A stretch of 64,000 nt of DNA, from positions 62,001-126,000 of IMG/VR virus record IMGVR_UViG_3300044957_000763, one strand, 5' to 3'. Shown piece by piece: positions 22,816 to 39,618 of this stretch. The translations under genes and the position numbers were made by a program. Position 1 is the first letter of the stretch. Each line of letters opens with the position of its first letter. The notes below the pieces were generated by a model. The model was given only the letters and a program-made list of their open reading frames with translations, was not told the origin of the DNA and searched no databases.

Positions 22816-23471
22816 GAATTACACCAGTAGAAGCGCACGCAAATGATACAAAACTTCGCGAACAATATGGCGATATTTTGTGTGGCATAGACGAAGTTGG
22901 ACGAGGCTCCTGGGCCGGGCCATTAGTGGTTGGGGCTGTAGTATTACCAAAAGATGTCATCATACCCAAGCTAACAGACAGCAAACAAATCTCAGCACAA
23001 TTAAGGGACTCTCTTGCAGAGCAAATCAAAGAAGTCGCCCTGGCGTGGACTGTTTTTCAGATTGAAGCGAACTCTATTGACAGAAAGGGACTTACTTGGG
23101 CAAACGCAATTGCCTCATACGAAGCAGGCAAGATAATCCAGCAAATAATTAATGTTGACTTGTTCGTCTTAGACCAAATGCCTGAATGTGACCTTGAACC
23201 GCACATTATGATGGCAAAGGCAGACTCTCTATCACATGTAGTTGCTGCTGCTTCAATCATAGCCAAGACATACAGAGATAATCTAATGAATGAACTCGGA
23301 GAGCAATATCCAGAATATCATCTCGATGCTCACAAGGGTTATGTATCACCATTGCATAAAATTGCTGTTAGGCAATACGGAAAAGTTCGGGGATTACATC
23401 GGTTCTCGTATAAGGTAGATGGAATCAATCCAGATGCTGGAAGAAGTGACTTACTGAGGCGCAAACAATGA
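22812..23471 (+). CDS. rnhB: Ribonuclease HII
   Basis: CGIDEVGRGSWAGP, DSK, KADSLSHVVAAASIIAK, HKGY. Confidence 0.93.
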   Translation: MRITPVEAHANDTKLREQYGDILCGIDEVGRGSWAGPLVVGAVVLPKDVIIPKLTDSKQISAQLRDSLAEQIKEVALAWTVFQIEANSIDRKGLTWANAIASYEAGKIIQQIINVDLFVLDQMPECDLEPHIMMAKADSLSHVVAAASIIAKTYRDNLMNELGEQYPEYHLDAHKGYVSPLHKIAVRQYGKVRGLHRFSYKVDGINPDAGRSDLLRRKQ

Positions 23472-23969: not shown

Positions 23970-25001
23970 TTATTTAACCCAGCAGAAGAACTCAAACTCA
24001 GCGGTAAGCAGCCCTGTGCTAACATTGAAAGATGACGACTTGACTACACTTTTGCTCAAGTCGACAACTTCTTTAGCGCCATCCCAGAACAAACTTTCCC
24101 ATTCGGTTGTGTCTGGGTTGTAGATGTTCAAACAGAATGTACTAGGCACACAAACTGACTGCCCTGGTAACTGAAGTGTGATATCTGAACCTGCGTTTTC
24201 TCCATAAGAAAGGTTCAAAGATTCGTCACCCTCTTGCCATGCATAGGCCTGGTCATAATCATCAAAATCGTAATCACCTGTCAGGTCTTCTAGTAAAACA
24301 GCGGCGGTACCTGAACCAGAGATAGTAACACCAGATACACCTATGAACGGAAATTGCGTACCCCAGTTACGTGCCAAATCTTGAACATCATTACCAGGGT
24401 CACAGTCTGTAGTGCCACCAAGGAAGAAATGTTCGACAGTTTGTACTTGAACCTGTAGCTGTGCATTCATGACATACATGTAATATCCAGCAAGATTTAC
24501 TCTAAAATCATAAAAACGAGCCACACGAGTTGGACACCCGGCATGTGATGGGTCTAGCTGATAAGACGGTACGTTATTTCCTGCACCACCGAACCCCGGA
24601 GGTACATCTGCAAAGACTTCAAAGACCGGTGGTTGATTCGGGTCGCCGTCGCTGATTAGTCCAAGACTAACACTCGTTTGATTTTCGTTGATAGAAATGC
24701 TTGCATTTTGAATAAGTGGTAGCGTAGCATTCACTGGGTCAAGCGCATTTGTGATTTGCTCCAAGAGCAATGCTCTGCCGTCTATAGCAGAACCTGGGCC
24801 TACTAGAATAGGCATTGTTAGGTCAATTTTTTCATGAGCACCGCCTATGTCTAAAACTCTAGCCTTAGGTGTACCTTGAATATATGTTTTTGCCTGAACA
24901 TCCATCGACCGGGTGCGCTTTGCTGTTTCGGCCAAAACAAAGCGGTCACCACCGATTCGTAATGTCTTGAATACTCCCAAGAGTTCGTTTCTAATAGGCA
25001 T
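23970..25001 (-). CDS. Putative tail tube-like structural protein (paralog 1)
   Basis: Shares K-x-YIQG-x-P...D-x-G...I-x-x-x-x-x-P motif with the adjacent ORF; beta-rich; AGGA SD. Confidence 0.45.
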   Translation of the reverse strand: MPIRNELLGVFKTLRIGGDRFVLAETAKRTRSMDVQAKTYIQGTPKARVLDIGGAHEKIDLTMPILVGPGSAIDGRALLLEQITNALDPVNATLPLIQNASISINENQTSVSLGLISDGDPNQPPVFEVFADVPPGFGGAGNNVPSYQLDPSHAGCPTRVARFYDFRVNLAGYYMYVMNAQLQVQVQTVEHFFLGGTTDCDPGNDVQDLARNWGTQFPFIGVSGVTISGSGTAAVLLEDLTGDYDFDDYDQAYAWQEGDESLNLSYGENAGSDITLQLPGQSVCVPSTFCLNIYNPDTTEWESLFWDGAKEVVDLSKSVVKSSSFNVSTGLLTAEFEFFCWVK

Positions 25002-25099: not shown

Positions 25100-26104
25100 T
25101 TACGAGAAAAAGAATAATTCGGTTGGGTTGTTCTTGTGACTTGGTTTAACAATGCCCATGAAATCTGTTTTGCGTCGCAGTACGCCTGCTATCAACGGCA
25201 CTGTTGACACTTTGTACAGTGGAATTCTGAATAGAGCCCTTGCTGGACCAAATTGAAATGTTAGGTCTTCGTCCTGAATCCAGCCAGCATGCATGTGTGT
25301 CTCGGTGTCTCCGCCTAGTCTAAGCACTTCTTCAAATGTGCCGCCCCATCGAGTTTCTTCAACCCCTAAAATCAATGGTTGCTCTGGCATAAAAGCCCAA
25401 TCACTTGGCTGATTTGGACTTATCCCTGGCGCGGTCGCTGCTCGATTGTTGATGTGACACGGAGGAATAAACACAGGAGCGACAATCTTGTTTCGGACGT
25501 ACACCTCAAAAGAAACAACGTTTCTCATTGCACTTGAGACACGAGAGCAATCACAATCTTGTAAGGACAATTGTCGACCTAGAAGGAAGCTACTTGGTGG
25601 TGCCACCAAGTCTGCCGGTTCACGCTCGTTAATCATTCCAGTAAAGGTAGCTGATAAGGTGACGCCAGAATCTGGTGACATTTTGATTGTAAGTGATTCA
25701 ATGACCATGCAATTAAGCGACAGAAGTTCGTTATCTTCGTCTCCGCCATTGTCTTTATCGGCCGCTATACCTCCGTATGACAGTACATGATTGGTGTCAA
25801 TTATTGATGACGCATTTGGATTGTGTGCAATCTGCAGTAATCTTTGGGCTGCGGCTTCTAATGCTCCGTCTCTGTCTACACGCAGTGGAAGTGTAATGTT
25901 GCCTTTTATCACCTTCTTGCCCATATCAACAATAGATGAGTTAGGCCCGCCTTGAATGTAGTTTTTAAGGTCTACTTCGTGCTCATAGTTGATGTCACAC
26001 GAATTGACAATCGTGTAGTATCCATCAACACGTATTCCGCGCACCAAAATACCTGTGGCAATTTGGCCAGCGTCATATACTCCTGGGGTGTCACGGTAAA
26101 TCAT
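25100..26104 (-). CDS. Putative tail tube-like structural protein (paralog 2)
   Basis: KNYIQGGPNSSIVDMGKKVIKGNITLPL; IESLTIKMSPDSGVTLSATFTG is tube-like. Confidence 0.45.
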   Translation of the reverse strand: MIYRDTPGVYDAGQIATGILVRGIRVDGYYTIVNSCDINYEHEVDLKNYIQGGPNSSIVDMGKKVIKGNITLPLRVDRDGALEAAAQRLLQIAHNPNASSIIDTNHVLSYGGIAADKDNGGDEDNELLSLNCMVIESLTIKMSPDSGVTLSATFTGMINEREPADLVAPPSSFLLGRQLSLQDCDCSRVSSAMRNVVSFEVYVRNKIVAPVFIPPCHINNRAATAPGISPNQPSDWAFMPEQPLILGVEETRWGGTFEEVLRLGGDTETHMHAGWIQDEDLTFQFGPARALFRIPLYKVSTVPLIAGVLRRKTDFMGIVKPSHKNNPTELFFFS

Positions 26105-26147: not shown

Positions 26148-28547
26148 TCATGTTGTGCTAACGGCTATAAGTTCATCGCCTTTATCTGGTGGCACCTTGA
26201 GCAATGGCTTGATTGATTCTCGAATCTCTGAAGGATTAAGCATTACGCTCGAGCCATCTTTCGTACTACAAACAAGTGCGGTGTTGTCAGCAATAGGTAT
26301 CGCTGCAATAACTAATCCTGTTCGGTCAAACTTAACGTTGTCAATCGTGTTCTTGCCTACGGCTTGACGACCCGAATAACACCTGAATTTAGATATTGGC
26401 AATTTTTGAACGTATCCTAATGATGCAACGAACATGATGTGGCCGTTGAAATCATTGTGGACAACCACTGACTGTGCTATTTTATCGTTGGTTGCGAGCT
26501 TGATGGCCCTAACACCGTTGGAGTTTCTACCCTGAATAGGGACAGAAGACAATGGATAGCAAACACCCTTGCCCATTTCTGTAGCGACAAGCAATTCGCC
26601 ATTATCAACACAAGGATGTGCGCTGATTAACCTTGAACCATCATTAATTTTCATGATATTGATTCCGGTTCGCTTCTTTGACTCAAACTCTGTTCCTTTG
26701 ATGCGCTTGACATGACCATCTTTTGTTGTAAGCACAAACATTTTCTTGACAGCAGATTCGAGTTCATATATGCCAATAACACTTTCGTCTGGACGACAAC
26801 CAATGAGTTGAGCGATGTGGGTGCCTTTGCCCTTTCCACTGTATGGTATATCATGACCTTGTTTGCAGTAGGCTGTTCCTGTGTCGGTCACAAACACAAT
26901 AGTGTTCAGTGTATTTGTCTCTACGTATTGAGAGCCTTGGTCAAACGAACCGTTTCTGCGAACATATCCATCAAGATTGATACTTACTACGATATCTTCC
27001 CGCTTAATTAGGTCTTGTGCCGAAACAGTTTCAGCATCGTCTCCGATTTGCGTTCGGCGGTCGTCACCATACTTCTCAACAAAATCATCTAATTGCTTAA
27101 GAACAGCATCCCGCATTGCGGATTTGGAAGACAGTAGTTTCTCGAGTTTTGAGGCACGTTTTTCAGCCTGGTCTTTTTGCTCAAGTAACTGATTGACTTC
27201 GAGTTTAGTTAGCTTCTTAAGGCTAATTTCAAGCACTGCTATTGCCTGCTCGTCGGTTTTGACGTATTTACACGCAATCAACCGCTCTTTTGCATCTGTA
27301 GGTGATTCAGAATCAAGAATCAAATCAACAACCTCTCGAATCTTTGAACATATGTTCACAAGACCTTCGAGAATATGGATGCGTTTGGTGAGTTTATCGA
27401 GTTCTGCTTCACTGCGCCTCTTGAGAATAGAAACTCGGTGATTGTAATAAGACATCGCCAGGTCAATGATTGAAACATTTTCACTGGCGCGCCCATTGAC
27501 AATGGCTGTTTGATTCACTGAGAATGTGTTGCGCAAACACGTATTTCGCAGAAGTGTCCTTATTACCAATTGCTCATCTGCTGTTTTAGACAGTGTGAAC
27601 ACAATCTTGATAACTTTGGCACCGTCTTTTCGGTGACTGAGTTCTTTAAGGTCTGTGACTCCATCGAGTTTTTTGTTTTGCACTAAATCCGCAACTTGTT
27701 GTGCTAATTTATCTGGTGAAGAGCCATACGGGAGTTCGTTGACGGTGATTGTCTTGTTGCCTTTGGAATCTGCACCAGTTTCCCATATTCCATCTATCGT
27801 GATGGTTCCTCGACCAGTGTTGTAATACTGACGTGTTGAACTTTGTCCGCGAATAACGCCACCAGTTGGGAAGTCAGGGCCTGGCATAAGTTCTAATAGT
27901 CGGTCAACAGTTACATCTTTGTTTGTGACACACTCTCGAATCACCGATGCGACTTCGCGTAAATTATGTGGTGCGAAATTACACGCGATACTTACTGCAA
28001 TACCAGAACCACCGTTACACAGAAGATTAGGAAACAGTCCCGGTAGAATAACTGGTTCGAAATCAGTTTCAGTATAGTTTGGCTGAAAATCTACCGCATC
28101 TGCGCTAACATCATCTACTACAGCGATTCCATATGGACTCAAACGAGCCTCTGTGTATCGCATCGCCGCTGCATCAAGACCGTCGACAGTGCCGAAATTT
28201 CCTTGACCGTGAATTAGCGGATACCTTAAAACCCAGTCTTGCACAAGACGAGTAAGAGTGGGGTAAATGACTGACTCACCATGTGGGTGCAAGTCGCCGC
28301 TAGTTTGTCCACAGACTTTGGCGCACTTGCAGTATTTACTACCGTCATCAAGTCCAAGCCTGTACATGGAATACAACAATCGACGTTGGGCCGGCTTGAG
28401 TCCGTCTTTAGAGTTCGGGATAGCACGTTGAAGAATTGCGTGTGTTGAGTATCGGACATATGAGTTGTCCAAAACTCTTGGCAATGACTGTTCTTCAATG
28501 TCACCGAAATACTCGATATTGACTGCGTCTTTTCTTTTTCTAGCCAA
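26148..28547 (-). CDS. gyrA: Type IIA topoisomerase subunit A (GyrA/ParC family)
   Basis: DGLKPAQRR, HPHGES, AAAMRYTEARL (catalytic Tyr), GPDFPTGG, six-bladed CTD; TTG start overlapping the gyrB stop. Confidence 0.95.
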   Translation of the reverse strand: MARKRKDAVNIEYFGDIEEQSLPRVLDNSYVRYSTHAILQRAIPNSKDGLKPAQRRLLYSMYRLGLDDGSKYCKCAKVCGQTSGDLHPHGESVIYPTLTRLVQDWVLRYPLIHGQGNFGTVDGLDAAAMRYTEARLSPYGIAVVDDVSADAVDFQPNYTETDFEPVILPGLFPNLLCNGGSGIAVSIACNFAPHNLREVASVIRECVTNKDVTVDRLLELMPGPDFPTGGVIRGQSSTRQYYNTGRGTITIDGIWETGADSKGNKTITVNELPYGSSPDKLAQQVADLVQNKKLDGVTDLKELSHRKDGAKVIKIVFTLSKTADEQLVIRTLLRNTCLRNTFSVNQTAIVNGRASENVSIIDLAMSYYNHRVSILKRRSEAELDKLTKRIHILEGLVNICSKIREVVDLILDSESPTDAKERLIACKYVKTDEQAIAVLEISLKKLTKLEVNQLLEQKDQAEKRASKLEKLLSSKSAMRDAVLKQLDDFVEKYGDDRRTQIGDDAETVSAQDLIKREDIVVSINLDGYVRRNGSFDQGSQYVETNTLNTIVFVTDTGTAYCKQGHDIPYSGKGKGTHIAQLIGCRPDESVIGIYELESAVKKMFVLTTKDGHVKRIKGTEFESKKRTGINIMKINDGSRLISAHPCVDNGELLVATEMGKGVCYPLSSVPIQGRNSNGVRAIKLATNDKIAQSVVVHNDFNGHIMFVASLGYVQKLPISKFRCYSGRQAVGKNTIDNVKFDRTGLVIAAIPIADNTALVCSTKDGSSVMLNPSEIRESIKPLLKVPPDKGDELIAVSTT

Positions 28548-30462
28548 CTTCTACACCCTCACCGCTTCTCTCAAGCAAGTATTCCTTTCTGGCAGACACT
28601 GACTTACCCATGAATGTTGATAATACTCGTTCGGCGTCAGCAGCATCTGGTACGCTAATGCGAATCAGTTTTCTGGTGGCATAGTCCATTGTGGTTTCTG
28701 CCAATTCGTGTGAGTTCATTTCTCCAAGACCTTTGAACCTTGTAATTCTTGGGCTCTTAAGTTTATCTACAATCTTCCTAAGCTCGTCATCATTCCAGCA
28801 ATAGTGTTTGACACCTTTGGAGTCCTCGACTTTGTAAAGTGGTGGAACGGCCAAATACAGATGACCATATGATACCAGAGGTTTCATGTATCGGTAGAAG
28901 AAAGCCAATAAAAGTGTTTCAATATGACCACCGTCAACATCGGCGTCAGTCATAATGATAATTCGTTCATATCTTCGGTCTTCAAGTCTAAAAGCCTCTT
29001 TGCCAGGTATTTCTACTCCAGAACCAATTGCAAGTACTAAACTCTTGACTTCTTCGTTTTTTAGTATACTTGCAAGGTCGTTTTTTTCTGCGTTCATGAT
29101 TTTACCACGCAATGGCAGAATTGCTTGAGTTTGTGGGTCTCGGCCATCAATAGCTGAACCAGCGGCCGAATCACCCTCTACGACAAACAACTCACTGTTG
29201 TGCCGGCTATCAACATTGCAGTCTTTGAGTTTGCCAGGAAGTCTAGTGCTTTTTGCAAAGGCACCTTTGCGCTTGATAAGGTCGGATTCTCGCTTTGCTG
29301 CTTCGCGGGCTTTTTGTGCTAACTGTGCTCGTTCAACGATTCTCTTGAGGAACTGAGGGTCTCTTTGAAAATAATCACTAAGTTGCTCTGATACAACAGA
29401 AAGAACCGAAGACTCGGCCTCTGAAGAACCTAACCTTCCCTTTGTTTGTCCTTCAAATTGTGGTTGTCGCAATCGGACAGTAAGAACCAGTACCAATCCA
29501 TCTCTGATATCATCGCTTTGTAAGCTATCTTTAATAAGGCCGCCTTTTTTGGCCGCAGTATTAACAGCAGATGTTAGCGCACGTTTGAACCCTGAGATAT
29601 GCGTACCACCTTCTGGTGTATGAATATTGTTGGCATATGAATGCAGGCTTTCATCGTCGTCCGAACGATACTGCATGCCAAATTTTACAGTTACTGCACC
29701 ACTTTTACCTTCAATAACAAGTGGTTGCTCTGGGTAAAGTCCTGTAGAATCACCGATAAAATCTGACAACATATCAATGATTCCACCGTCTGACAGGAAC
29801 GTATATTGTTTGTCATTTGGCTCATCATTAAATGTTACTTTCAAACCTGGATTAAGGTGTGCAATTTCTCGCAGTCTTCGAACTATAATGTTTGAATCAT
29901 AGTGCTTAACCGACTTAAAAATACCTTTGTCCGGTGTGAATGTGATTTTGGTTCCAGATTTTCCTGCACTGCCAATTTTCTCAACCTTAGTCGAAGGCTT
30001 ACCTTTTGAATAAGTTTGTTTATAGCTCCCAACTGCTCCTGCTGATTTGTCGACTCGATTTACCACAACCTCGAAATATTCAGATAGTGCGTTTACACAC
30101 GACACACCAACACCGTGCAAGCCACCAGATTCCTGATATGCTTCATCGTGACCAAATTTACCACCGGCATGTAACACGGTCATAACAACTTCAAGCGTAG
30201 ACCTACCGTCAGATGGGTGATTATCTACCGGAATCCCTCGACCATCGTCTTCAATAGACACAGTGAATCCGTCTTTGAATAAAACAACGTTGATGTTCGA
30301 GCAAAACCCTTGCATTGCTTCGTCTACGGAATTGTCTAGAACCTCACCTATTAAGTGATGCATTCCTCGCTCTCCGTCATCACCAACGTACATGCCAGGT
30401 CGCAACCTAACGGCATCCATCGGTTCTAAAACCGTGATTGATTGTGTACTGTACTTGGACAT
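28540..30462 (-). CDS. gyrB: Type IIA topoisomerase subunit B (GyrB/ParE family)
   Basis: RPGMYVG, DNSVDEA, DDGRGIP, GGLHGVGVSCVNALS, EGDSAAG, PLRGKI, IMTDADVDG, RFKGLGEMN. Confidence 0.96.
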   Translation of the reverse strand: MSKYSTQSITVLEPMDAVRLRPGMYVGDDGERGMHHLIGEVLDNSVDEAMQGFCSNINVVLFKDGFTVSIEDDGRGIPVDNHPSDGRSTLEVVMTVLHAGGKFGHDEAYQESGGLHGVGVSCVNALSEYFEVVVNRVDKSAGAVGSYKQTYSKGKPSTKVEKIGSAGKSGTKITFTPDKGIFKSVKHYDSNIIVRRLREIAHLNPGLKVTFNDEPNDKQYTFLSDGGIIDMLSDFIGDSTGLYPEQPLVIEGKSGAVTVKFGMQYRSDDDESLHSYANNIHTPEGGTHISGFKRALTSAVNTAAKKGGLIKDSLQSDDIRDGLVLVLTVRLRQPQFEGQTKGRLGSSEAESSVLSVVSEQLSDYFQRDPQFLKRIVERAQLAQKAREAAKRESDLIKRKGAFAKSTRLPGKLKDCNVDSRHNSELFVVEGDSAAGSAIDGRDPQTQAILPLRGKIMNAEKNDLASILKNEEVKSLVLAIGSGVEIPGKEAFRLEDRRYERIIIMTDADVDGGHIETLLLAFFYRYMKPLVSYGHLYLAVPPLYKVEDSKGVKHYCWNDDELRKIVDKLKSPRITRFKGLGEMNSHELAETTMDYATRKLIRISVPDAADAERVLSTFMGKSVSARKEYLLERSGEGVEVG

Positions 30463-31731: not shown

Positions 31732-34700
31732 TTACACTCGAAACGTTGCTTTTAATTGTAAGTTTCCAAGTTGATATGGTCCCTCTCCTGTTGGCGGTTT
31801 AACTGCGATAGCTAGTTTCTTTGACGAACCAATCAGTCTTGGGTTTACATAGGCAATTCCGAGGTCAATAGCATCATCTTGAGTTGTTGGTAGATTTGCC
31901 CAGGTATCTGGGTTTTGTAACAAAGTGCTGCCAAATGCATCAGCATATGTAGACGAAGCGTCATCTATACTCAAGCCGTCTGGATTGTTCCACTCTTCGT
32001 CTTCGAGTGTATCTGTTTTGAGTCTCCAAAGACTTGGTTCTCCTTCTGGAGAATATCGCGTGTATACTACATAATCTCCATCTGGTGTATATGTTGGTCT
32101 CGTGCACTCAGAAGTATTTTGTGTGAGTCGTGTCTCTGTGTTAGTAGCCAACTCATATGAATACAACTGATATTCACCAGTCCTATCATTCGCATAGACA
32201 ACTATCGTTCCAGTCGGGTTCAGGCATGGATACCTACAATTACCTTCAACACTAACAACCACTTCGTGACCAGTGGCATCAGGTGTCACTTTCCATATCT
32301 CATAATCACCTGCGCCTACTTTTCTTGAGTAGTACACATGCGTTCCACTTGGATTCCATACTGGTTCTATTGAATTAGATGTATTAGGGTCTGTTAAAAA
32401 CATTTTTCCTGTACCGTCATTGTCCATTATCGCCACCCCGTAATTCAAGAATGACGTGGCACCAAATGAAAACCCGTAAACAATATCAAGATAAATGATT
32501 GAATCATCATTTGTTTGATAAACAATTCTTGCATTGTTATCCACAGGTTCCCAAGATGGCTGAGAACTTTGAATTAGTAAGCCATAGTGATTTGTCAATA
32601 AACTCAGCACTGAACTGGAATTAAGTTTGTAAATATTGACTCCGCCATTGCCCTGGCTAACATACGCCAGCTCTGTTCCGTTTTTGCTCCATGATGGCTG
32701 ATATGCATTTGCGTATGAACTTTCCGCAATAGTATTGTTGTCAGCACCTGTGGCTGCTATTTTGTAAATTTCATACTGACCATCAATATTGGAATCAAAA
32801 ACGATTTTTGCATCTGATTCGCCGTAATATGCGCTGCCGCATTCACCACTGTTCCACAGCAAATATGGTGCAAAAACTGTTCCAAGAGGTGTGTTTCGTG
32901 TATATATGTTTCGATAATTGTCTTCGCCTGCTACTAAAACGATTTTATTACCGTCGCTTCTCCAATCTGCTTGATAAACATTCAAGCCATTAGCATCAAC
33001 TTTGGTCTCTGTACCACCACCGATGGGCACATAATACAATTCCCATTTACCAGAACGATTACTAGTGAACATGACCTGAGTGTTGTCTGGAGAAATAGCC
33101 GGATAATCATTGTCACCAGTGGTGGACAATTGTGTCTGATTTGTGCCATCGTCATTCATTATCCAAATTTGTGGACTGCCTGTTCTAGTACTAACAAATG
33201 CAATTTTAGTACCGTCTTGGCTCCAGGCCGGGTGATAATCTTCTCCAGTATTAGTTGTTAATCGTGTAACAGCTCCGCCTGATGTAGCGCGTTTGTAAAT
33301 GTCAAGATTAGAATTTGTTCCACGGTCACTGGCAAACACCATGTATGAACCTGCGGTGTTCATATATGGGTGTTTGTCATTGTATGAGTTCGACATTACT
33401 TGAGACTCAGTACCAGCTAAATTCACTGAGTAAATCTGATGATTACCATTTCGGTCTGAACCAAAAACAATGTCATTTGTGTTTCTGTTGTATCGAGGGT
33501 CTGTGTCCTGAGAATATGTTTCTGTAAGTTCAATCTCGTCAGTACCATCAATATTTCTCCATACAAGTATGTTGCTTGCGGTGAGTTCTTTGGTGTACAT
33601 AACCCTACCGGCTACTGGGTCTACCCTAGGCCATTTTCCTGGAAAACTAACAGCAGAAACATCTCCGGTCTCCTTTGCCTCAACTCTGTAAATCTCACCG
33701 TTGCCATTTTGAGAGATGGCTTCAAATACGATTTCCTCGTCATTTGGAGTAAAAGAGGGACTACGATTTCCAAGTGGTGTAATCGCAGTGACTACCTGCA
33801 CCATGTTGGTGCCATCTGAGTCACACATCCAAACTTCGCCAGAGCGAATAAATGTGATTTTAGTCGCATCATTAGACCACCTTGCCTGGCCGTCCTCGGC
33901 TGTTGTTGATAGACTCGTATTTCCAGTACCATCTGGATTGATAAACCCAAAACCGGCCTGAGCATTGTTTGTCAAGGTTGTGTACAGAATTTTGTCATTG
34001 GTGCCCCAGTCAGGAAAAGCTGATGATGCACGCAATAAAGTTCTATCCCATGGAACTAACGTGCTGGCTGTGTAAATCCCATACGATGAATTAAACACGT
34101 CTAAAAAGCGCGACTGAATGACTATCTCTGATGAATCGGGACTTAAAGAGGCAAATCTATCATTGTATCCGAGACTTGTAATTCTAACTGCGTCATCATG
34201 CCCTGTAATTGAATACAATCCACTAACGTAATAGTTACTATCTTGACCAGAAAAATAGGTTATATCGTCATCTACGTTGTGCCCTGCTACTGGAGATGTA
34301 AGATATGTGTTTATTGTAATATTGCCTCCAGGACCAGTACCATCTGTTACGAAAATACCACCGTTATCTCCTAGAACTTTGCGACAGTACACTACCTTAA
34401 TTCCATCAGAACACCATCGTGCACCAATTTCTTCAGTTGTTGGTTCATTATCTGTGTTTGCTGATATAAAGCGAGCCATTGACGAACCGTTGACCTTGAT
34501 AGTGTGCAATCTATGAACTCCAGGATACGCCTCGTCTGTATACAACAATTCTGGCGAAGTGCTGCGCCAACTAATGTAGCTTTTATCAGTATCAGTGTCT
34601 GTCAGTTTGGTTAGCTTTTGTGTACTAATTGTGTAAAGAAATATCTGCGGTTTAAGAGGATGGTTTCCAGTTCCTCCTGGCATAATAATCGCAATGCGTT

Positions 34701-37158
34701 TTCTGTCTGGGTTATAACAAGCATATTCTGCCGGAATAGGTAAGTCAGTATCAGTGGTCAACTCAGTGGGAGTGCTTGAATTCAATTCATACAAGCGACC
34801 GCCATATGTAAACAATTGTCTTAATCCGTCTGCAGAAACATCTTGTAATACTGTGGTTTCAAAGTTCGTAGTATACTGAGTGGTAACCGTAGACGATGTC
34901 GGATTGTAATAGCATATAGCTGTGTTAAACCCTGGCACACTACGTTCAAAATACACTCTATTTAGACTTGCACAATAAATAGCTCTTTTATCTGAAACAA
35001 TTGCCTCGAGTGTTGCTGCTGTTTTGTTACTTCCGTCAAATGAACACAACAACAGTTTTTCTCTACCGATAGTGGAAGTTCTGTTAAATACAATTTGAGA
35101 ACCGTCATAAGACCATGAGCCGCCGTATAAACAATCGACAGTGTCTACTGATTGTGTTTCACCACCCAGCGGGTCTACATACTTAAGACTTCTTCTACCA
35201 AGTTCTGAAGCTGAATCATACACAATGGTCGTACCATCAGGGTCCCATGACAAATAGAATTCAGAATTGCTGTTGTACGTGATTCTATCAAGGTTAGTCC
35301 CAGTGGCTATATCTACACTATATATCTCGAAATTATCTTTGTTAAATGCAACTCGTGTTCCATCTGGTGACCATGCGATTGGTGACGATACTATATTGTT
35401 GCCAACAGCGACTTGAGATGAACCATCGGCGTTCATTACATACAATTTGAAATCATTACCAACTCTATTTGATGCAAAAGCAATTTTTGTACCGTCTGGA
35501 GAAACTGTTGGCCAAATGTTTACTCCAGAAGAGGTCAGTACTGTTTGGTTGGTGCCATCAGTGTGCATTGAGTAAATCTGATGTGCACCGCTTTGGTCGC
35601 TCATATAAATAATGCGTTCACTTACTGGATTGGCCGCATATTTCCAACTTGGAAAAGTACAATCAAATGCATTGTTAATCAATCGTGTTTGACCTGTTCC
35701 ATCTGAGTTGATTTTGTAAATCTGATAGTTCCCATCTTTGTTGGTAGAAAATGCAAGTTTTGAACTGTCTACATTCCATGTTGGTTGCCAACTGACTCCA
35801 GTGTTAGATGTGACAGGTGTTGCTATTCCGATGTTGAGGTCTGAACCAGTTTGGTAAATATTGATATTTCCATCACCACGGTCGCTGCAAAATGCAAAAA
35901 GCTCTCCGGTTCTATCGAATGCAGGGCAAAAACTTTCTGGACTGTTTTCTGTCAGTCTGTTAATTGGTATACCAGTAGACAAACAAGTCATAACAACCCT
36001 ATACTTGCTTCTTATCGAATCATAAATAATTCTCGTTCCATTGTGATTGCCCTGCGGAGAACCATCGTCATAAGCAGAATACGTGATGCGATTAAGGGAT
36101 GTGCCATCACTATTGATTGTGTAGATGTGTTTTGTTGCATTTGCACGTCCAGAAAACACAATGGATGTGCTTGACAACCAGGATGACTCTATGGCATCGC
36201 GGCCAGTTTGAGTTACCCTGGATATACCAGAACCATCGTCATTAATCGTATATATGTCGTAACTTCCTGTTCTGTTTGATGAAAATGCGATTACGTTGGA
36301 TGACGGGTTGTAAGCAGGGTCAATATTGGAAAATCCAGTAGCATCAACGTTAGTAGTACCTGTGCCATTTGATTGAATGTAGTAAATCTGCTCTACATCA
36401 TCCCTGGTACTAACAAAGCAAATTCTGGTGCCGTCGTAATTCCAACATGGTGAATAATCATCACCATCGTAAATAGAAGATGTGCGATTCGTTAGTCTTG
36501 TAAGACCTGTGCCATCAGACTTTATAGTATAAAGTTGCCATCCCGTATGCGCGTCTGAAGCAAACACGATTTTGTTAAAACTAGGGTTTAGAGGATTGGT
36601 AACCTTACACCAATGTGGGTCAATAGCATTATAAGAAGGTTCGGTTAGCGGAATTGCGCCAGTGCCATCGGCGTTAGCGCGATAGATTTGCTTTTTTCCG
36701 GCGCGGTCTGATACAAAAACAATCTGAGTACCGTCATAGTTATAGCTACCACTGTAGCTATCTAATGAGTGTGCAGTGAGTTGTAGTATTTCATTGTTTT
36801 CTTCTCCAGATGAAAAAATGTTTGACTCATTAGCATTGTGTGTCCCCAATGAATATGCGATTCTATACGCATCTACAATGGTTGATTTAATTTCATATCC
36901 AAGCGCAGTTAAGTCAACCCTGGGTGTTACAGTACCATCTTCGTTGATAAGGTCTACACTACTCGGGTCGCACCATACCTGAATAGATTTTGCTGGCGCG
37001 CCGGCAAATCTTAAGCTGACAATTGATTTCACATCCGTATCGTCATCGCCATACGTTCCAGCCTTGTAAGTACCCATATTAAGTACCGACAAGCCATCAT
37101 CTGTTACAATGTAACCAGGACCTGGATAATGTTTGCGCCAACGATAAGAGAATGCCAT
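31732..37158 (-). CDS. 1808-aa TolB/PD40-like multi-beta-propeller protein
   Basis: Dozens of repeats of the form P-x-W/F-S-x-D-G-x-x-I-x-F-x-S-x-R-x-G...IY-x-x-N-x-DG...RLT; non-repeat N- and C-termini; no signal peptide. Confidence 0.9.
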   Translation of the reverse strand: MAFSYRWRKHYPGPGYIVTDDGLSVLNMGTYKAGTYGDDDTDVKSIVSLRFAGAPAKSIQVWCDPSSVDLINEDGTVTPRVDLTALGYEIKSTIVDAYRIAYSLGTHNANESNIFSSGEENNEILQLTAHSLDSYSGSYNYDGTQIVFVSDRAGKKQIYRANADGTGAIPLTEPSYNAIDPHWCKVTNPLNPSFNKIVFASDAHTGWQLYTIKSDGTGLTRLTNRTSSIYDGDDYSPCWNYDGTRICFVSTRDDVEQIYYIQSNGTGTTNVDATGFSNIDPAYNPSSNVIAFSSNRTGSYDIYTINDDGSGISRVTQTGRDAIESSWLSSTSIVFSGRANATKHIYTINSDGTSLNRITYSAYDDGSPQGNHNGTRIIYDSIRSKYRVVMTCLSTGIPINRLTENSPESFCPAFDRTGELFAFCSDRGDGNINIYQTGSDLNIGIATPVTSNTGVSWQPTWNVDSSKLAFSTNKDGNYQIYKINSDGTGQTRLINNAFDCTFPSWKYAANPVSERIIYMSDQSGAHQIYSMHTDGTNQTVLTSSGVNIWPTVSPDGTKIAFASNRVGNDFKLYVMNADGSSQVAVGNNIVSSPIAWSPDGTRVAFNKDNFEIYSVDIATGTNLDRITYNSNSEFYLSWDPDGTTIVYDSASELGRRSLKYVDPLGGETQSVDTVDCLYGGSWSYDGSQIVFNRTSTIGREKLLLCSFDGSNKTAATLEAIVSDKRAIYCASLNRVYFERSVPGFNTAICYYNPTSSTVTTQYTTNFETTVLQDVSADGLRQLFTYGGRLYELNSSTPTELTTDTDLPIPAEYACYNPDRKRIAIIMPGGTGNHPLKPQIFLYTISTQKLTKLTDTDTDKSYISWRSTSPELLYTDEAYPGVHRLHTIKVNGSSMARFISANTDNEPTTEEIGARWCSDGIKVVYCRKVLGDNGGIFVTDGTGPGGNITINTYLTSPVAGHNVDDDITYFSGQDSNYYVSGLYSITGHDDAVRITSLGYNDRFASLSPDSSEIVIQSRFLDVFNSSYGIYTASTLVPWDRTLLRASSAFPDWGTNDKILYTTLTNNAQAGFGFINPDGTGNTSLSTTAEDGQARWSNDATKITFIRSGEVWMCDSDGTNMVQVVTAITPLGNRSPSFTPNDEEIVFEAISQNGNGEIYRVEAKETGDVSAVSFPGKWPRVDPVAGRVMYTKELTASNILVWRNIDGTDEIELTETYSQDTDPRYNRNTNDIVFGSDRNGNHQIYSVNLAGTESQVMSNSYNDKHPYMNTAGSYMVFASDRGTNSNLDIYKRATSGGAVTRLTTNTGEDYHPAWSQDGTKIAFVSTRTGSPQIWIMNDDGTNQTQLSTTGDNDYPAISPDNTQVMFTSNRSGKWELYYVPIGGGTETKVDANGLNVYQADWRSDGNKIVLVAGEDNYRNIYTRNTPLGTVFAPYLLWNSGECGSAYYGESDAKIVFDSNIDGQYEIYKIAATGADNNTIAESSYANAYQPSWSKNGTELAYVSQGNGGVNIYKLNSSSVLSLLTNHYGLLIQSSQPSWEPVDNNARIVYQTNDDSIIYLDIVYGFSFGATSFLNYGVAIMDNDGTGKMFLTDPNTSNSIEPVWNPSGTHVYYSRKVGAGDYEIWKVTPDATGHEVVVSVEGNCRYPCLNPTGTIVVYANDRTGEYQLYSYELATNTETRLTQNTSECTRPTYTPDGDYVVYTRYSPEGEPSLWRLKTDTLEDEEWNNPDGLSIDDASSTYADAFGSTLLQNPDTWANLPTTQDDAIDLGIAYVNPRLIGSSKKLAIAVKPPTGEGPYQLGNLQLKATFRV

Positions 37159-37164
37159 AAAACC

Positions 37165-37194
37165 TAAACCCCTTAGAAGAGTCCAAGGGGTTTA
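37165..37194. promoter_or_regulatory. Intergenic hairpin TAAACCCCTT-N10-AAGGGGTTTA
   Basis: 10-bp perfect stem between the phoH stop and the propeller-gene start, immediately upstream of the latter's ATG; could be a terminator or translational element. Confidence 0.4.
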
Positions 37195-37203
37195 TACATT
37201 GAG

Positions 37204-38595
37204 TTAATGTGCTTCCGGTCGACCAAATATAGCAGATGCGGCGGCTGCCAACGGCGAACGCTCTACCTTGGTCAATTTGACAACAGCGGCCATGTTGCTC
37301 TTTTTGGAGCCAATAGCGGCATGAGATAGACCATTTGAACGATTGTCCAAGAATGGATTTTCTACCTGCGATGGGTCTCCTAGAAGTATGATTTTAGAAT
37401 CTCTTCCGCAGCGTTCGACAACCATTCGTGCCACACGCGGACTGACGTTCTGCAATTCATCTACTATGACTACACTATTTGCAATTGAGCGACCTTGAAT
37501 ATACGCAAGTGCTTCAACTTCAATGATACCTTCGTCTACCATCTGTTCAAATGTTTCGCCTGCTGCGCGACGACGACTGTTAATGAGTTGTTGCACGTTG
37601 TCCTTCATAGGGCCAAGCCAAGCACTAAGTTTTTCGTATTTATCTCCTGGTAATGCACCAATATCTACGCCGCCGACTGGAATATTGGGTTTGATAACTA
37701 CAATCCTGTCGTATGCGCCGTCATTAACTTTTTGCAGTGCTACAGAGAGGCTTAGAATAGTTTTGCCTGTTCCGGCAGGACCTATCAAAACAACCAATGG
37801 AATATCTTCTGCTGCTAATGCCTCCATTGCGAATCTTTGCTCAATATTATGAGGTTTGATTCCCATGAATTCTGGTTTTTGTCCGTGTTTATCTCGGAAT
37901 ACACGAATTTCGTTGTCTCTAAACCAACATGGACAAACTTGTTCACTAAACTTGAACATGACAAATTCGTTGGAATTAAGTTTTGCAATTTGTTCTTGCA
38001 ATTGACTCGTCAACTGCTCTGTTTTAACCACTTCGCCGCTGCCGTACAAATTATTCCAGTCTTCAATGTTATCCAATTCAATGTGAACAACACCATCATA
38101 GATTTCATCTTCAAGCAAATCACTTCGATAGTTTTCTGCCGTACATCCCATTGACTGTGCCCTAACACGTAGCCCTGTGTCTTTTGACACAATTGCAACT
38201 TTTTTGTGACTTTGGGCTTTAAGCATCAAACATGTTTGAATGATAGCATTATCACTGTTAACGCGGACAATTGCAGGCATTTCTCCGCGTTGCACTGGTG
38301 CTTCTGGGTTGTAAATGAATAATCTTCCATTGTGCTCATTAATCACAACTCCTTTTGAAACTAAATCCTCCAAGTTTAGTTTGTCAAGGTGCCTGAAGAC
38401 TTCACGTGCAGCCCAACCAGTAGGGTCTCGACGTGTCTTGAGTTCATCAAGGTCGTCTATTACTGCGAGTGGTAAGTAGATGTCATTGTTCTTGAATTTG
38501 AATAATGCTGATGGGTCATGTATTAAAACGCAAGTATCAACGACGTAGGAGTGTTTAACCAAAGGATTCCTCTTTGTATTTTTTGTGCTTGCCAC
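37204..38595 (-). CDS. phoH: PIN-PhoH (PhoH2/YlaK-type) ATPase
   Basis: N-terminal PIN YVVDTCVLIHDP...NSDN...VSKDTGLR; PhoH GPAGTGKT, YIQGRSI, VDELQN, LGDPSQ; GTG start. Confidence 0.92.
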   Translation of the reverse strand: MASTKNTKRNPLVKHSYVVDTCVLIHDPSALFKFKNNDIYLPLAVIDDLDELKTRRDPTGWAAREVFRHLDKLNLEDLVSKGVVINEHNGRLFIYNPEAPVQRGEMPAIVRVNSDNAIIQTCLMLKAQSHKKVAIVSKDTGLRVRAQSMGCTAENYRSDLLEDEIYDGVVHIELDNIEDWNNLYGSGEVVKTEQLTSQLQEQIAKLNSNEFVMFKFSEQVCPCWFRDNEIRVFRDKHGQKPEFMGIKPHNIEQRFAMEALAAEDIPLVVLIGPAGTGKTILSLSVALQKVNDGAYDRIVVIKPNIPVGGVDIGALPGDKYEKLSAWLGPMKDNVQQLINSRRRAAGETFEQMVDEGIIEVEALAYIQGRSIANSVVIVDELQNVSPRVARMVVERCGRDSKIILLGDPSQVENPFLDNRSNGLSHAAIGSKKSNMAAVVKLTKVERSPLAAAASAIFGRPEAH

Positions 38596-38616: not shown

Positions 38617-39618
38617 TCATTCACCCACCTGCTCTTTATTGATACGTTGTAAAAAGTCAGAAGCATGCGGGTCGTATTTTACCTGTGGTGTTTTTCGACG
38701 TAAAATTGCTCTCAGTCTTTCAGCTTCTACTTCTTTCATAGTTTTGGTGTCTAGCCAGTTTAGTGCGCCGGCTTGACGGTCTTTCTCCTGTTGTCGTTGT
38801 TGTAACGAGCCATCTCTCAAATCACGCAATGCGTTTTTTACTCCATCTCCAGATACAAAATCTTGAGCGGTATGTAGTGTAGTAGTCTCAAGCAAATCAT
38901 AGTCAACATACATCGCTTTTTGTAACCTGCCTTGCATTACAATGGTTCTGTCTCCAACTTGATACACTTCTTCTTCTGACTTAAAGAAATATGGACATGC
39001 TCGAGGAAAACAAATGTAAATCTTAAATGGAAGAGCATGTCCAATATCACTGCCTGCTGTGAGTCTTCTTACATCATCTTCATCTGGAACCAATGACACT
39101 GCTATTTTAACACCCATATCAGGTACTGCAAAATCCCACTCGTAGTTATGTTGTGGTAGTTCTGGATAGAACGCGGGTGCAATTCCAAGTTCATTTTTTC
39201 GTTCTGAAAGTGCAACAAAAAGACCATACCCTACAGAGTCAGCCGTTGTACCAGGTCTATAGTATCCGAGGTCGTCCCAGTCAATTTCGTATCTCTTACC
39301 ATCAATCTCAATAGAACGAGACTTGTCGGCGCCGCCCGAATCATAGTAACGACGTGCAATTGGGTCGGAAAGGATTGTGTGAGAACGAATTGCTAACTTA
39401 AACAACTCTTCTGCGTTTTCTAGACCTGGGTTATAATCAGGATGATATTTTCGACAGGCGTTTTGGTATGCTCTGTCAAGGATATCAGCTAATACTCTTC
39501 TGTCAGCGGGTGTAGTGCCACTTGGCACGCTTTCGCGAACAAGCCCAAGGACATCGTAATAATCTACAGAGAAGTCTACTAGTTTTTTCGCGTCCATTCT
39601 TTTTGTTGTTGACGACAT
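38617..39618 (-). CDS. J-domain protein with unknown C-terminal region (class C)
   Basis: DYYDVLG...AYQNACRKYHPDYNPG...FKLAIRSHTILSDPIARRYYD. Confidence 0.85.
   Translation of the reverse strand: MSSTTKRMDAKKLVDFSVDYYDVLGLVRESVPSGTTPADRRVLADILDRAYQNACRKYHPDYNPGLENAEELFKLAIRSHTILSDPIARRYYDSGGADKSRSIEIDGKRYEIDWDDLGYYRPGTTADSVGYGLFVALSERKNELGIAPAFYPELPQHNYEWDFAVPDMGVKIAVSLVPDEDDVRRLTAGSDIGHALPFKIYICFPRACPYFFKSEEEVYQVGDRTIVMQGRLQKAMYVDYDLLETTTLHTAQDFVSGDGVKNALRDLRDGSLQQRQQEKDRQAGALNWLDTKTMKEVEAERLRAILRRKTPQVKYDPHASDFLQRINKEQVGE

What the first reader, a model, noticed from the sequence alone, without database searches (positions are those of the whole stretch)
31732..37158. 1808-aa TolB/PD40 poly-propeller protein in a phage
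Seen: about 1600 aa of near-continuous TolB-type blades (roughly 35 blades at about 45 aa each, so perhaps 5-6 propellers), no signal peptide, no catalytic peptidase domain, bracketed by short non-repeat termini. Known: TolB has one propeller that binds Pal, and colicins and some phages exploit Tol-Pal. Inference: either a multivalent virion adhesin anchored by its paired termini or a Tol-Pal mimic or decoy.
Basis: partly seen in the sequence, partly recalled or inferred. Interest (0 to 1): 0.62.

Follow-up and report, generated by a model that had tools for sequence, protein, structure and literature searches.

The report
Six-propeller loop in split phage anchor
A 479-kb lake-water phage encodes a 1808-residue protein in which six TolB-type beta-propellers sit inside one loop of a small, conserved phage domain. 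Related phages carry the same domain bare or with other inserts, so it looks like a plug-in display scaffold, probably on the virion, and not a Tol-Pal mimic.

Summary
Window 31732-37158 (minus strand) is one intact ORF of 1808 aa. It has about 35-36 PD40/TolB-type blades in six propellers, no signal peptide, no membrane segment and no peptidase domain.

The new result concerns the "short non-repeat termini". They are two halves of one roughly 165-aa domain.
- Profiles built only from the giants' termini both hit stand-alone phage proteins of 158-186 aa, where the two halves are contiguous.
- A two-chain model pairs the termini (ipSAE 0.66, best control 0.01).
- Every family member inspected sits in the same genomic slot: DnaJ, PIN-PhoH, X, small ORFs, GyrB, GyrA.
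- X carries no insert, 2-7 repeat modules of the head-decoration/tail-fibre type, or about 1600-1700 aa of PD40 propellers.

The protein is therefore a loop-insertion variant of an undescribed huge-phage family. A virion-displayed, multivalent binding protein is the most likely function, but this is inferred, not shown. The Tol-Pal mimic idea has little support. The one homolog labelled bacterial lies in a phage-derived ~532-kb segment of a 1.36-Mb contig.

The parts
31732..37158 (-). Whole ORF, 1808 aa plus stop (P0001)
36859..37158 (-). N half of the split anchor domain (residues 1-100)
   Evidence: The profile of residues 1-122 hits the N-terminal ~100 residues of small, mid-size and giant family members. 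Interface residues in the pairing model are 1-12, 24-73 and 83-97. Modelled alone, pLDDT is below 45.
36784..36858 (-). Conserved N-side linker (residues 101-125)
   Evidence: Length is 24-25 residues in all 10 full-length homologs.
35971..36783 (-). Propeller 1 (residues ~126-396), six blades, TolB-like
   Evidence: Blades start at 126, 170, 218, 267, 311 and 354. VIA against TolB: Z 27.1, rmsd 2.5 A, 242 aligned, model residues 143-397.
35023..35970 (-). Propeller 2 (residues ~397-712), seven blades
   Evidence: VIA against the seven-bladed S9 carboxypeptidase propeller: Z 29.7, rmsd 2.7 A, 294 aligned. WDR5 and RbBP5 give Z about 27-28. Strand pattern.
34189..35022 (-). Propeller 3 (residues ~713-990), about six degenerate blades
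   Evidence: Strand pattern. VIA against the teneurin six-bladed propeller: Z 19.4, rmsd 2.7 A, 236 aligned, model 19-287 = residues 718-986. Few blades reach the PD40 profile.
33538..34188 (-). Propeller 4 (residues ~991-1207), about five degenerate blades
   Evidence: Twenty strands in five sets of four. Extent is inferred from strand counting only.
32716..33537 (-). Propeller 5 (residues ~1208-1481), six blades, the most TolB-like
   Evidence: VIA against E. coli TolB 3iax_A: Z 31.0, rmsd 2.0 A, 250 aligned, 19% identity. Best PDB sequence matches fall in 1270-1422.
32017..32715 (-). Propeller 6 (residues ~1482-1714), five to six blades with a long hairpin insert near 1540-1580
   Evidence: Extent is inferred from strand counting only.
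31927..32016 (-). Conserved C-side linker (residues 1715-1744)
   Evidence: 28-30 residues in all 10 homologs.
31735..31926 (-). C half of the split anchor domain (residues 1745-1808)
   Evidence: The profile of the giants' C-termini hits the C-terminal ends of the small and mid-size family members. Interface residues run from 1742 to 1808. Modelled alone, pLDDT is below 45.
37165..37198 (-). TGTATAA box (37198-37192) and 13-bp hairpin (37194-37165), lying between the PhoH stop codon and the ATG
   Evidence: A box plus strong hairpin recurs before the orthologous gene in 5 of 6 loci, with different stem sequences. It is not a genome-wide motif.
37204..38595 (-). Upstream neighbour: PIN-PhoH ATPase. 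A conserved flank of the slot.
28540..30462 (-). Downstream flank: GyrB-like topoisomerase II subunit, followed by the GyrA-like subunit at 26148-28547

Best explanation
**Architecture (shown).** The gene encodes a member of an undescribed family of huge-phage proteins built on a beta-rich anchor domain of about 165 aa. One loop of that domain tolerates large insertions. Here the loop, between about residue 100 and residue 1745, holds two conserved linkers and six PD40/TolB-type propellers.

**Closed loop (inferred).** The N-terminal ~100 and C-terminal ~65 residues come back together to rebuild the anchor. That would leave the propeller array as a closed loop hanging from one small domain.

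**Function (inferred).** The anchor docks the protein on the phage particle, on head or tail. The propellers then act as a large multivalent binding surface for ligands on host cells or particles in lake water. This would parallel the repeat modules that orthologs carry in the same loop.
For: **Split domain**
- An HMM of residues 1-122, run against 1.84 billion proteins, finds 18 proteins. They include stand-alone proteins of 158-186 aa.
- An HMM built only from the giants' last 100 residues hits the C-terminal end of the members carried into, except the probably truncated P0132. In the small proteins this lies directly after the N part.
- The loop between the halves already varies in length among the small proteins.

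**Pairing model**
- The model supports binding but does not show it: score 0.66, best of 3 controls 0.01.
- The mark was reached by 58 of 80 solved complexes and 2 of 110 mismatched pairs. These counts hold only roughly, because my own alignments were used.
- The runs agree in at least 62% of contacts and the partner's pLDDT is at least 56.
- Antiparallel strand pairs: N47-51 with C-piece 69-74, N59-63 with 95-98, N88-93 with 74-79.
- Each terminus modelled without the other is disordered.

**Orthology by position**
- The 169-, 437-, 887-, 991-, 1776-, 1790-, 1821- and 1909-aa forms all lie in the slot DnaJ, PIN-PhoH, X, small ORFs, GyrB, GyrA.

**Virion-type inserts in orthologs**
- The 991-aa form matches phrog_2647 'head decoration' at E 5.7e-74 in 7 stretches. 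It also matches tail-fibre and virion-structural PHROGs.
- The same module type occurs in this phage's other giant proteins.

**Retention and composition**
- The propeller array is old and kept whole. Every propeller keeps its length within about 20 residues (most within about 5) in 10 homologs down to 32% identity, and internal identity between propellers is only 20-33%.
- PD40 carriers P0001-P0010 form one clade on the anchor tree, with support 97/91.
- There is no signal peptide or membrane segment. The protein is acidic and rich in Ser, Thr, Asn and Gly.
- From general knowledge: PD40 arrays in bacteria are mostly extracytoplasmic, and Ig-like modules in phages are found on virion proteins.
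Against: - No virion proteomics, microscopy or binding data exist, and no cultured relative was found.
- The gene lies co-directionally among replication and chaperone genes, not beside recognisable structural genes. The only nearby structural hint is a sub-threshold tail-tube match five genes away.
- Conservation is spread evenly along the protein, with no hypervariable tip of the kind receptor-binding proteins often show.
- The anchor has no detectable relative among solved structures, Pfam or PHROGs. Its docking role is therefore inferred only from the pattern of inserts.
- Intramolecular pairing cannot be told from head-to-tail pairing between molecules.
- The Ig-like fold of the orthologs' inserts was not tested.
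Confidence: 0.5

Rival explanations
1. It is an intracellular scaffold. The protein stays in the infected cell and uses its propellers as a protein- or peptide-binding hub. It would work with its conserved neighbours: the J-domain protein, PIN-PhoH, gyrase and DnaK.
For: - Gene order with DnaJ, PhoH, GyrB/GyrA, RNase HII and DnaK is strictly conserved across relatives down to 32% identity.
- There is no export signal.
- Conservation along the protein is even.
- From general knowledge: the propellers of tricorn and S9 peptidases are cytoplasmic substrate gates.
Against: - Orthologs in the same slot have no insert, or have repeat modules of the virion-decoration type. The insert is therefore an exchangeable accessory, not a fixed partner of the neighbouring enzymes.
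- Gene order in huge phages is a weak guide to function.
- There is no catalytic domain to gate.
Confidence: 0.2
2. It is a packaged and ejected protein. It would be carried inside the head or tail and released into the host envelope or cytoplasm at infection, where the propellers bind envelope or defence components.
For: - The protein is large, acidic and has no signal peptide, and huge phages commonly package large proteins (and general knowledge).
- A prohead-protease-like gene lies in the window at 14035-14958.
Against: - No processing sites were examined.
- A rigid loop of six propellers is a poor candidate for passage through a tail channel (inference).
- The orthologs' inserts resemble surface modules.
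Confidence: 0.1
3. It is a Tol-Pal mimic or decoy. The TolB-like propellers would bind Pal, TolA or colicin-like TolB boxes and disturb the host Tol-Pal system.
For: - Propellers 1 and 5 superpose on TolB (Z 27-31, rmsd 2.0-2.5 A).
- TolB propellers are the best PDB sequence matches.
Against: - There is no signal peptide, so the protein has no route to the periplasm.
- There is no TolB N-terminal domain.
- Identity to TolB is only 15-20% in the structure alignments.
- Two of the six propellers are degenerate and one is seven-bladed.
- Orthologs replace the propellers with nothing or with unrelated modules.
- PD40 arrays are common in unrelated extracellular bacterial proteins.
Confidence: 0.03
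4. It is a head-to-tail polymer. The N half of one molecule pairs with the C half of the next, giving filaments or rings of propeller arrays rather than closed monomers.
For: The pairing model was run with two separate chains, so it cannot tell the two cases apart.
Against: In the small homologs the two halves belong to one chain. Intramolecular complementation is therefore the simpler reading.
Confidence: 0.1

Closest known systems
TolB (Tol-Pal system, TIGR02800), propeller domain
   Same: The blades are PD40-type and the propellers are six-bladed. P5 superposes at Z 31.0, rmsd 2.0 A over 250 residues, and P1 at Z 27.1. TolB propellers are the best solved sequence relatives.
   Different: It has no signal peptide, no TolB N-terminal domain and no tol-pal operon context. 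It has six propellers instead of one, and identity is 15-20% in the structure alignments. It is encoded by a phage.
Phage surface proteins that display repeat modules from a small particle-binding domain, such as T4 Hoc (comparison from general knowledge)
   Same: A small conserved domain is combined with a variable array of binding modules. Orthologs carry 2-7 repeat modules that match PHROG head-decoration, tail-fibre and virion-structural families.
   Different: The modules are inserted within a loop of the anchor rather than appended to it. Here they are propellers, not Ig-like domains. The anchor shows no sequence relation to any named decoration protein. Presence in virions is untested.
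Multi-propeller giant proteins of other large phages (Agrobacterium phage Atu_ph07, Bacillus phage G gp425/gp427, PhiPA3 gp360) and bacterial extracellular PD40 arrays
   Same: They share tandem beta-propellers in very large proteins, with Foldseek E values of 1e-9 to 1e-16 for these phage entries. Bacterial PD40 arrays of 1000-3000 aa share 22-40% identity over parts.
   Different: The resemblance is in fold only. None has the split anchor: the N-terminal profile finds only this family. The bacterial proteins carry export-type companion domains such as PKD, FN3, CarboxypepD_reg and S8 peptidase.
Tricorn protease and S9 peptidases (DPP-IV, prolyl oligopeptidase), N-terminal propellers
   Same: These proteins also use PD40 six- and seven-bladed propellers, paired in tandem in tricorn. 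P2 matches the S9 carboxypeptidase propeller at Z 29.7. Precomputed Tricorn_N and Tricorn_2nd hits are recorded on homologs.
   Different: There is no catalytic domain of any kind.

Membership tests
PD40 / WD40-like beta-propeller repeat (PF07676) | Repeated ~40-aa PD40 blades that reach the Pfam gathering score | tested here: met
   E 1.6e-78, 257.7 bits against a cut-off of 20.9. 29 blades by self-HMM.
TolB (TIGR02800 / Tol-Pal system) | Six-bladed PD40 propeller with the TolB fold | tested here: met
   P5 against 3iax_A: Z 31.0, rmsd 2.0 A, 250 aligned. P1: Z 27.1.
TolB (TIGR02800 / Tol-Pal system) | N-terminal alpha/beta TolB domain (PF04052) preceding a single propeller | tested here: not met
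   No TolB_N hit in Pfam. The best-scoring TIGR02800 stretch covers only profile positions 184-357, the propeller part; the other stretches' profile ranges are not listed. There are six propellers.
TolB (TIGR02800 / Tol-Pal system) | Sec signal peptide and periplasmic location | tested here: not met
   The N-terminus is polar. The highest hydropathy window in the first 40 residues is 1.16, and there is no membrane segment.
TolB (TIGR02800 / Tol-Pal system) | Gene lies in a tol-pal operon | tested here: not met
   The neighbours are the J-domain protein, PIN-PhoH, two small ORFs, GyrB and GyrA in a phage genome.
TolB (TIGR02800 / Tol-Pal system) | Conserved Pal- and TolA-contact residues | not tested
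   The residue lists were not available from a tool. Overall identity is 15-20% in the structure alignments.
Tricorn / S9 peptidases | Catalytic peptidase domain after the propellers | tested here: not met
   Only the propeller-region families DPPIV_N and Peptidase_S9_N match, and no catalytic family does.
Split-anchor family of huge phages (undescribed; defined here) | N-half and C-half profiles both match, at the two ends of the protein | tested here: met
   24 members of 158-1914 aa, small, mid-size and giant. Contiguous in proteins of 158-186 aa.
Split-anchor family of huge phages (undescribed; defined here) | Conserved slot between PIN-PhoH and GyrB | tested here: met
   The window plus nine contigs from other samples.
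Split-anchor family of huge phages (undescribed; defined here) | The two halves fold into one domain | tested here: met
   Model only: score 0.66, best of 3 controls 0.01. The mark was reached by 58 of 80 solved complexes and 2 of 110 mismatched pairs. At least 62% of contacts are shared and the partner's pLDDT is at least 56. The Atlas model of a small member has pTM 0.67.
Phage decoration or fibre proteins that display binding modules | Present on the virion surface, with the anchor binding a capsid or tail protein | not testable with these tools
   No cultured relative and no proteomics.
Phage decoration or fibre proteins that display binding modules | Carries Ig-like or other adhesion modules | tested here: inconclusive
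   Orthologs match head-decoration, tail-fibre and virion-structural PHROG modules, but their fold was not tested. This protein carries propellers instead.

The most novel reading that the evidence does not exclude
A conserved ~165-aa domain of a widespread group of uncultured huge phages acts as a plug-in display scaffold. A single loop has accepted nothing, arrays of decoration-type modules, or a ~1600-aa array of six propellers (I know of no larger single-loop domain insertion). This would give a closed ring or horseshoe of propellers on the virion that serves as a broad-specificity adhesin.
Probability: 0.35. Interest if true: 0.7.

Novelty: new variant of a known kind. Interest (0 to 1): 0.55.

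Why it matters
**If the reading is right**
- It gives a natural example of extreme domain insertion: about 1600 residues and six folded propellers inside one loop of a small domain.
- It identifies a previously unnamed core gene of a group of freshwater huge phages.
- It identifies that gene's variable part as a likely determinant of what the particle sticks to.
- A scaffold that tolerates such different inserts could be useful for phage display.
- It also warns annotators that 'TolB' or 'Tol biopolymer transport system component' labels on such phage genes reflect blade type only.

**If the intracellular rival is right**
- The family would instead be a new phage-encoded hub beside the gyrase and chaperone genes.

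Tried and rejected
**Searches that found nothing useful**
- The scan of viral contigs with peptide patterns found no relative.
- tblastn against 50,697 phage records gave only weak blade matches, such as Thermus phage Tsatsa. It gave nothing for the small ortholog or for the two conserved downstream ORFs.
- Pfam, PHROGs and NCBIfam on the termini, the small orthologs and the neighbours orf155 and orf217 gave no family.
- A PDB sequence search with the small-protein profile gave only chance-level rows.
- Literature searches for PD40, TolB or propeller proteins in huge or jumbo phages found no description.

**Leads examined and dropped**
- The Atlas feature search on the C-terminus scored 0.77, below the useful range.
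- The Atlas structure search with a small member gave viral hypothetical clusters and TM 0.5-0.57 to TasA/camelysin-like and DUF285 surface proteins. This is a fold-level lead only.
- P0124 (a T9SS protein with an LtfC-like domain) and P0126 (RCC1) appeared in the N-terminal profile search. hhalign gives P0124 only 17% probability over 38 columns, and P0126's hits are weak repeated stretches. Both are treated as chance or motif matches.
- orf155 and orf217 are not paralogs of the anchor.
- The TGTATAA box plus hairpin was tested as a genome-wide promoter or regulon signal. The box is not enriched and hairpins after it are at background level.

**Other negative results**
- Laying four lake-water runs on the gene showed no variants or indels, so it gave no copy-number information.
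- The junction of the 1.36-Mb contig has no integrase among seven ORFs. The contig's two phage ends are only 70% identical over 218 nt. Neither lysogeny nor a clean circular wrap could be shown.
- Pfam sheath and tail-tube searches of the whole phage gave nothing above cut-off.

**Process notes**
Full report
**1. The observation**

Window 31732-37158 (minus strand) is a single ATG-initiated ORF of 1808 codons without internal stops. The window is bases 62001-126000 of a 478,840-bp virus record with direct terminal repeats, rated complete. Its neighbours include phage-type topoisomerase II subunits, PIN-PhoH, a J-domain protein, DnaK, RecD-like and DnaB-like helicases and a protease. The phage setting is therefore sound.

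Pfam PD40 matches at E 1.6e-78. NCBIfam's TolB propeller model scores 515 bits, with its best stretch on the propeller part of the profile. TolB propellers are the best sequence relatives among solved structures. A blade HMM trained on the protein itself finds 29 blades, strong in 126-700 and 1210-1712 and weak between.

Two AlphaFold2 models cover residues 1-1200 and 700-1808. Each used an alignment of ten full-length homologs, and mean pLDDT is 70 and 76. They show continuous four-stranded blades through the weak region as well.

Structure alignment delimits four propellers:

| Propeller | Residues | Best match | Z | rmsd (A) | Aligned |
|---|---|---|---|---|---|
| P1 | 143-397 | TolB | 27.1 | 2.5 | 242 |
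| P2 | 397-712 | seven-bladed S9 peptidase propeller | 29.7 | 2.7 | 294 |
| P3 | 718-987 | six-bladed teneurin propeller | 19.4 | 2.7 | 236 |
| P5 | 1227-1481 | E. coli TolB (19% identity) | 31.0 | 2.0 | 250 |

P4 (~991-1207, about five blades) and P6 (~1482-1714, five to six blades) rest on strand counting only.

There is no signal peptide or membrane segment; the protein is acidic (206 Asp+Glu against 130 Lys+Arg) and rich in Ser, Thr, Asn and Gly. No peptidase domain is present. The gene is identical in contigs of four lake-water metagenome runs, one of which may be the source sample. The repeats are therefore not an assembly artefact.

**2. Relatives and context**

A word search finds nine full-length homologs of 1776-1821 aa, at 90% down to 32% identity and 99-100% coverage. 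Bacterial PD40 proteins follow with only partial coverage. These carry export-type companion domains.

One homolog, P0008 (60% identity), is labelled 'Armatimonadetes bacterium' and sits on a 1.36-Mb contig. It does not, for two reasons:
- Its neighbourhood is gene-for-gene syntenic with the window.
- Sampling the contig shows that its first ~532 kb is filled with homologs of genes from all over the 479-kb phage, at GC 0.53-0.555. The rest has GC 0.60-0.62 and is bacterial.

Two further homologs, P0009 and P0010, lie in the same gene order.

Across the ten homologs, every propeller and both linkers keep their lengths within about 20 residues at most (most within about 5). P1 and P2 are the best conserved and P3 and P4 the least. 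Propellers within one protein are only 20-33% identical to each other. The array is therefore old and retained as a whole. It is not a recently amplified or rapidly reshuffled repeat. It evolves somewhat faster than most neighbouring genes, at 60% against about 61-83% identity in the closest comparison.

**3. The termini are two halves of one domain**

Modelled without each other, residues 1-135 and 1724-1808 are disordered, with pLDDT mostly below 45. Yet both are well conserved.

Family scans and a word search restricted to the N-terminus left them open. I therefore ran the exhaustive profile search with residues 1-122. It returns 18 proteins:
- The giants, including two PD40 forms of about 1910 aa.
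- Stand-alone proteins of 158-186 aa (plus one of 127 aa, probably truncated).
- Forms of 433-437, 887 and 991 aa.

A second profile, built only from the giants' last 100 residues, then hits the C-terminal end of the small and mid-size members carried forward. In the small proteins this lies directly after the N part. In the alignment of small proteins, the joint between the halves is a loop of variable length.

Independently, a two-chain model of residues 1-135 with 1709-1808 supports pairing:
- The model supports binding but does not show it: score 0.66, best of 3 controls 0.01.
- The mark was reached by 58 of 80 solved complexes and 2 of 110 mismatched pairs. These counts hold only roughly, because my own alignments were used.
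- The runs agree in at least 62% of their contacts and the partner's pLDDT is at least 56.
- There are 323-368 contacts, arranged as antiparallel strand pairs.

The Atlas's own model of a small member has pTM 0.67. Its nearest structural neighbours are viral hypothetical proteins of 140-156 aa.

The protein is thus a ~165-aa domain with about 1640 residues inserted in one loop. Whether the halves pair within one chain or between chains cannot be decided by the model. The single-chain homologs favour pairing within one chain.

**4. One slot, many inserts**

Every family member whose contig I inspected lies in the same place: RecD-like helicase, a few small ORFs, a J-domain protein, PIN-PhoH, X, two or three small ORFs, GyrB-like, GyrA-like.

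| Form of X | Insert |
|---|---|
| 169 aa | none |
| 437 aa | two repeat modules |
| 887 and 991 aa | five to seven repeat modules |
| 1776-1909 aa | PD40 propellers |

The repeat modules match PHROG families annotated head decoration, tail fibre protein and virion structural protein. The 991-aa form matches phrog_2647 at E 5.7e-74 in 7 stretches. Their fold was not tested. The same module type occurs in this phage's other giant proteins.

I built a tree from the anchor halves with the inserts removed; the rows were N part plus C part, joined in a script. It puts P0001-P0010 in one clade (97/91). All insert-free and repeat-module forms except one long branch fall in another clade (95/95). The two ~1910-aa PD40 forms are unresolved. 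This fits one or a few acquisitions of the propeller array.

**5. What it most likely does**

Shown:
- The architecture.
- The family.
- The positional orthology.
- The exchangeability of the insert.

Inferred:
- The anchor fixes the protein to the particle and the insert is a displayed binding module.

The reasons for this inference are:
- The alternative inserts are of the kind found on virion proteins.
- PD40 arrays in bacteria are mostly extracytoplasmic.
- A phage protein without an export signal reaches the outside only on the particle or at lysis.

Against it stand four points:
- There is no virion evidence at all.
- The gene lies among replication and chaperone genes.
- Conservation is even, without a variable tip.
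- The anchor has no named relative.

I put the virion-display reading at about 0.5. An intracellular hub working with its neighbours is at about 0.2, a packaged and ejected protein at about 0.1, and a Tol-Pal mimic at about 0.03. The head-to-tail polymer reading (about 0.1) concerns the assembly state only and is not exclusive of the functional readings. The Tol-Pal idea fails on four counts: localisation, the missing TolB N-terminal domain, low identity, and orthologs that do without propellers.

**6. Comparison with what is known**

- **TolB:** the protein works like TolB only in having TolB-fold propellers. It is not a TolB, because three defining features were tested and not met.
- **Display proteins such as T4 Hoc (from general knowledge):** it resembles them in logic. 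It differs in that the modules are inserted within the anchor rather than appended, and are propellers.
- **Other large phages:** some have multi-propeller giants, a fold-level match only, but none of these has the split anchor.

Papers searched gave no description of this family.

**7. Verdict**

The standard bacterial genetic code was used throughout.

Noticed in passing
G001:C5 (loci L002, L007-L029), contig JAFDWS010000002.1 of GCA_018268375.1: A 1,363,254-bp contig of an 'Armatimonadetes bacterium' MAG consists of about 532 kb of huge-phage sequence followed by bacterial DNA. The phage part has GC 0.53-0.555 and carries homologs of genes from all over the 479-kb phage, in a permuted order. 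The bacterial part has GC 0.60-0.62 and starts with DinB, GH116 and a zeta-toxin-like kinase. The GC step is at about 532,000. No integrase was found among seven junction ORFs. The contig's first 218 nt match 531,104-531,317 at only 70%. It is either a prophage of about 0.5 Mb or a chimeric join; this is unresolved.
   Followed up: partly
window 37165-37198 (-); L002:9863-9925, L005:880-938, L030:9938-10003, L032:7937-8003: A TGTATAA-like box and a perfect 12-13-bp hairpin lie between the PhoH stop codon and the start of gene X. They recur in five of six loci. The stem sequences differ while pairing is kept (z-scores -4 to -5.5). In L003 a weaker hairpin (z -1.3) precedes the box. In the window the hairpin ends 6 nt before the ATG and holds the likely ribosome-binding site. 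The element is not a genome-wide motif. It could be a terminator, an attenuator or a 5' stabiliser.
   Followed up: partly
window 23970-25001 (-) and 25100-26104 (-): Two ORFs of 343 and 334 aa just after GyrA are the best conserved genes of the block, at 83% and 76% identity to the 60%-identity relative. They have no family. The 334-aa one gives a sub-threshold Phage_tube_2 match (25.3 bits, cut-off 27) in 2 of 5 orthologs. They may be structural genes in the same co-directional cluster.
   Followed up: partly
window 2117-5842 (+), 5872-14007 (+), 56944-61407 (+), 61742-64000 (+, runs on): The window holds further giant proteins of 1241, 2711, 1487 and about 2150 aa. The 1241-aa one has a PA14 domain. 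The 2711-aa one has a weak Sortilin/BNR-type match and a phrog_2647-type module. The last two share repeated segments with each other. They are likely the phage's other surface or fibre proteins.
   Followed up: no
G001:C5 about 504,000-520,000 (loci L014, L027): The related phage segment carries an array of 22 tRNA genes. One has anticodon CTA, which ARAGORN calls tRNA-Pyl, so it would read amber codons. The 64-kb window itself has no tRNA gene, and the gene studied needs no recoding.
   Followed up: no
L002:9920-10000: The deposited start of homolog P0008 appears to be 27 codons too short. tblastn extends the match 81 nt upstream, which restores the conserved N-terminal strand of the anchor.
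   Followed up: partly
window 21091-23471 (+), 38617-39618 (-): The phage encodes its own DnaK (574 aa), a J-domain protein and RNase HII near the locus. DnaK homologs at 41-52% identity occur in other huge phages, including the LR7565xx records and Lak.
   Followed up: no
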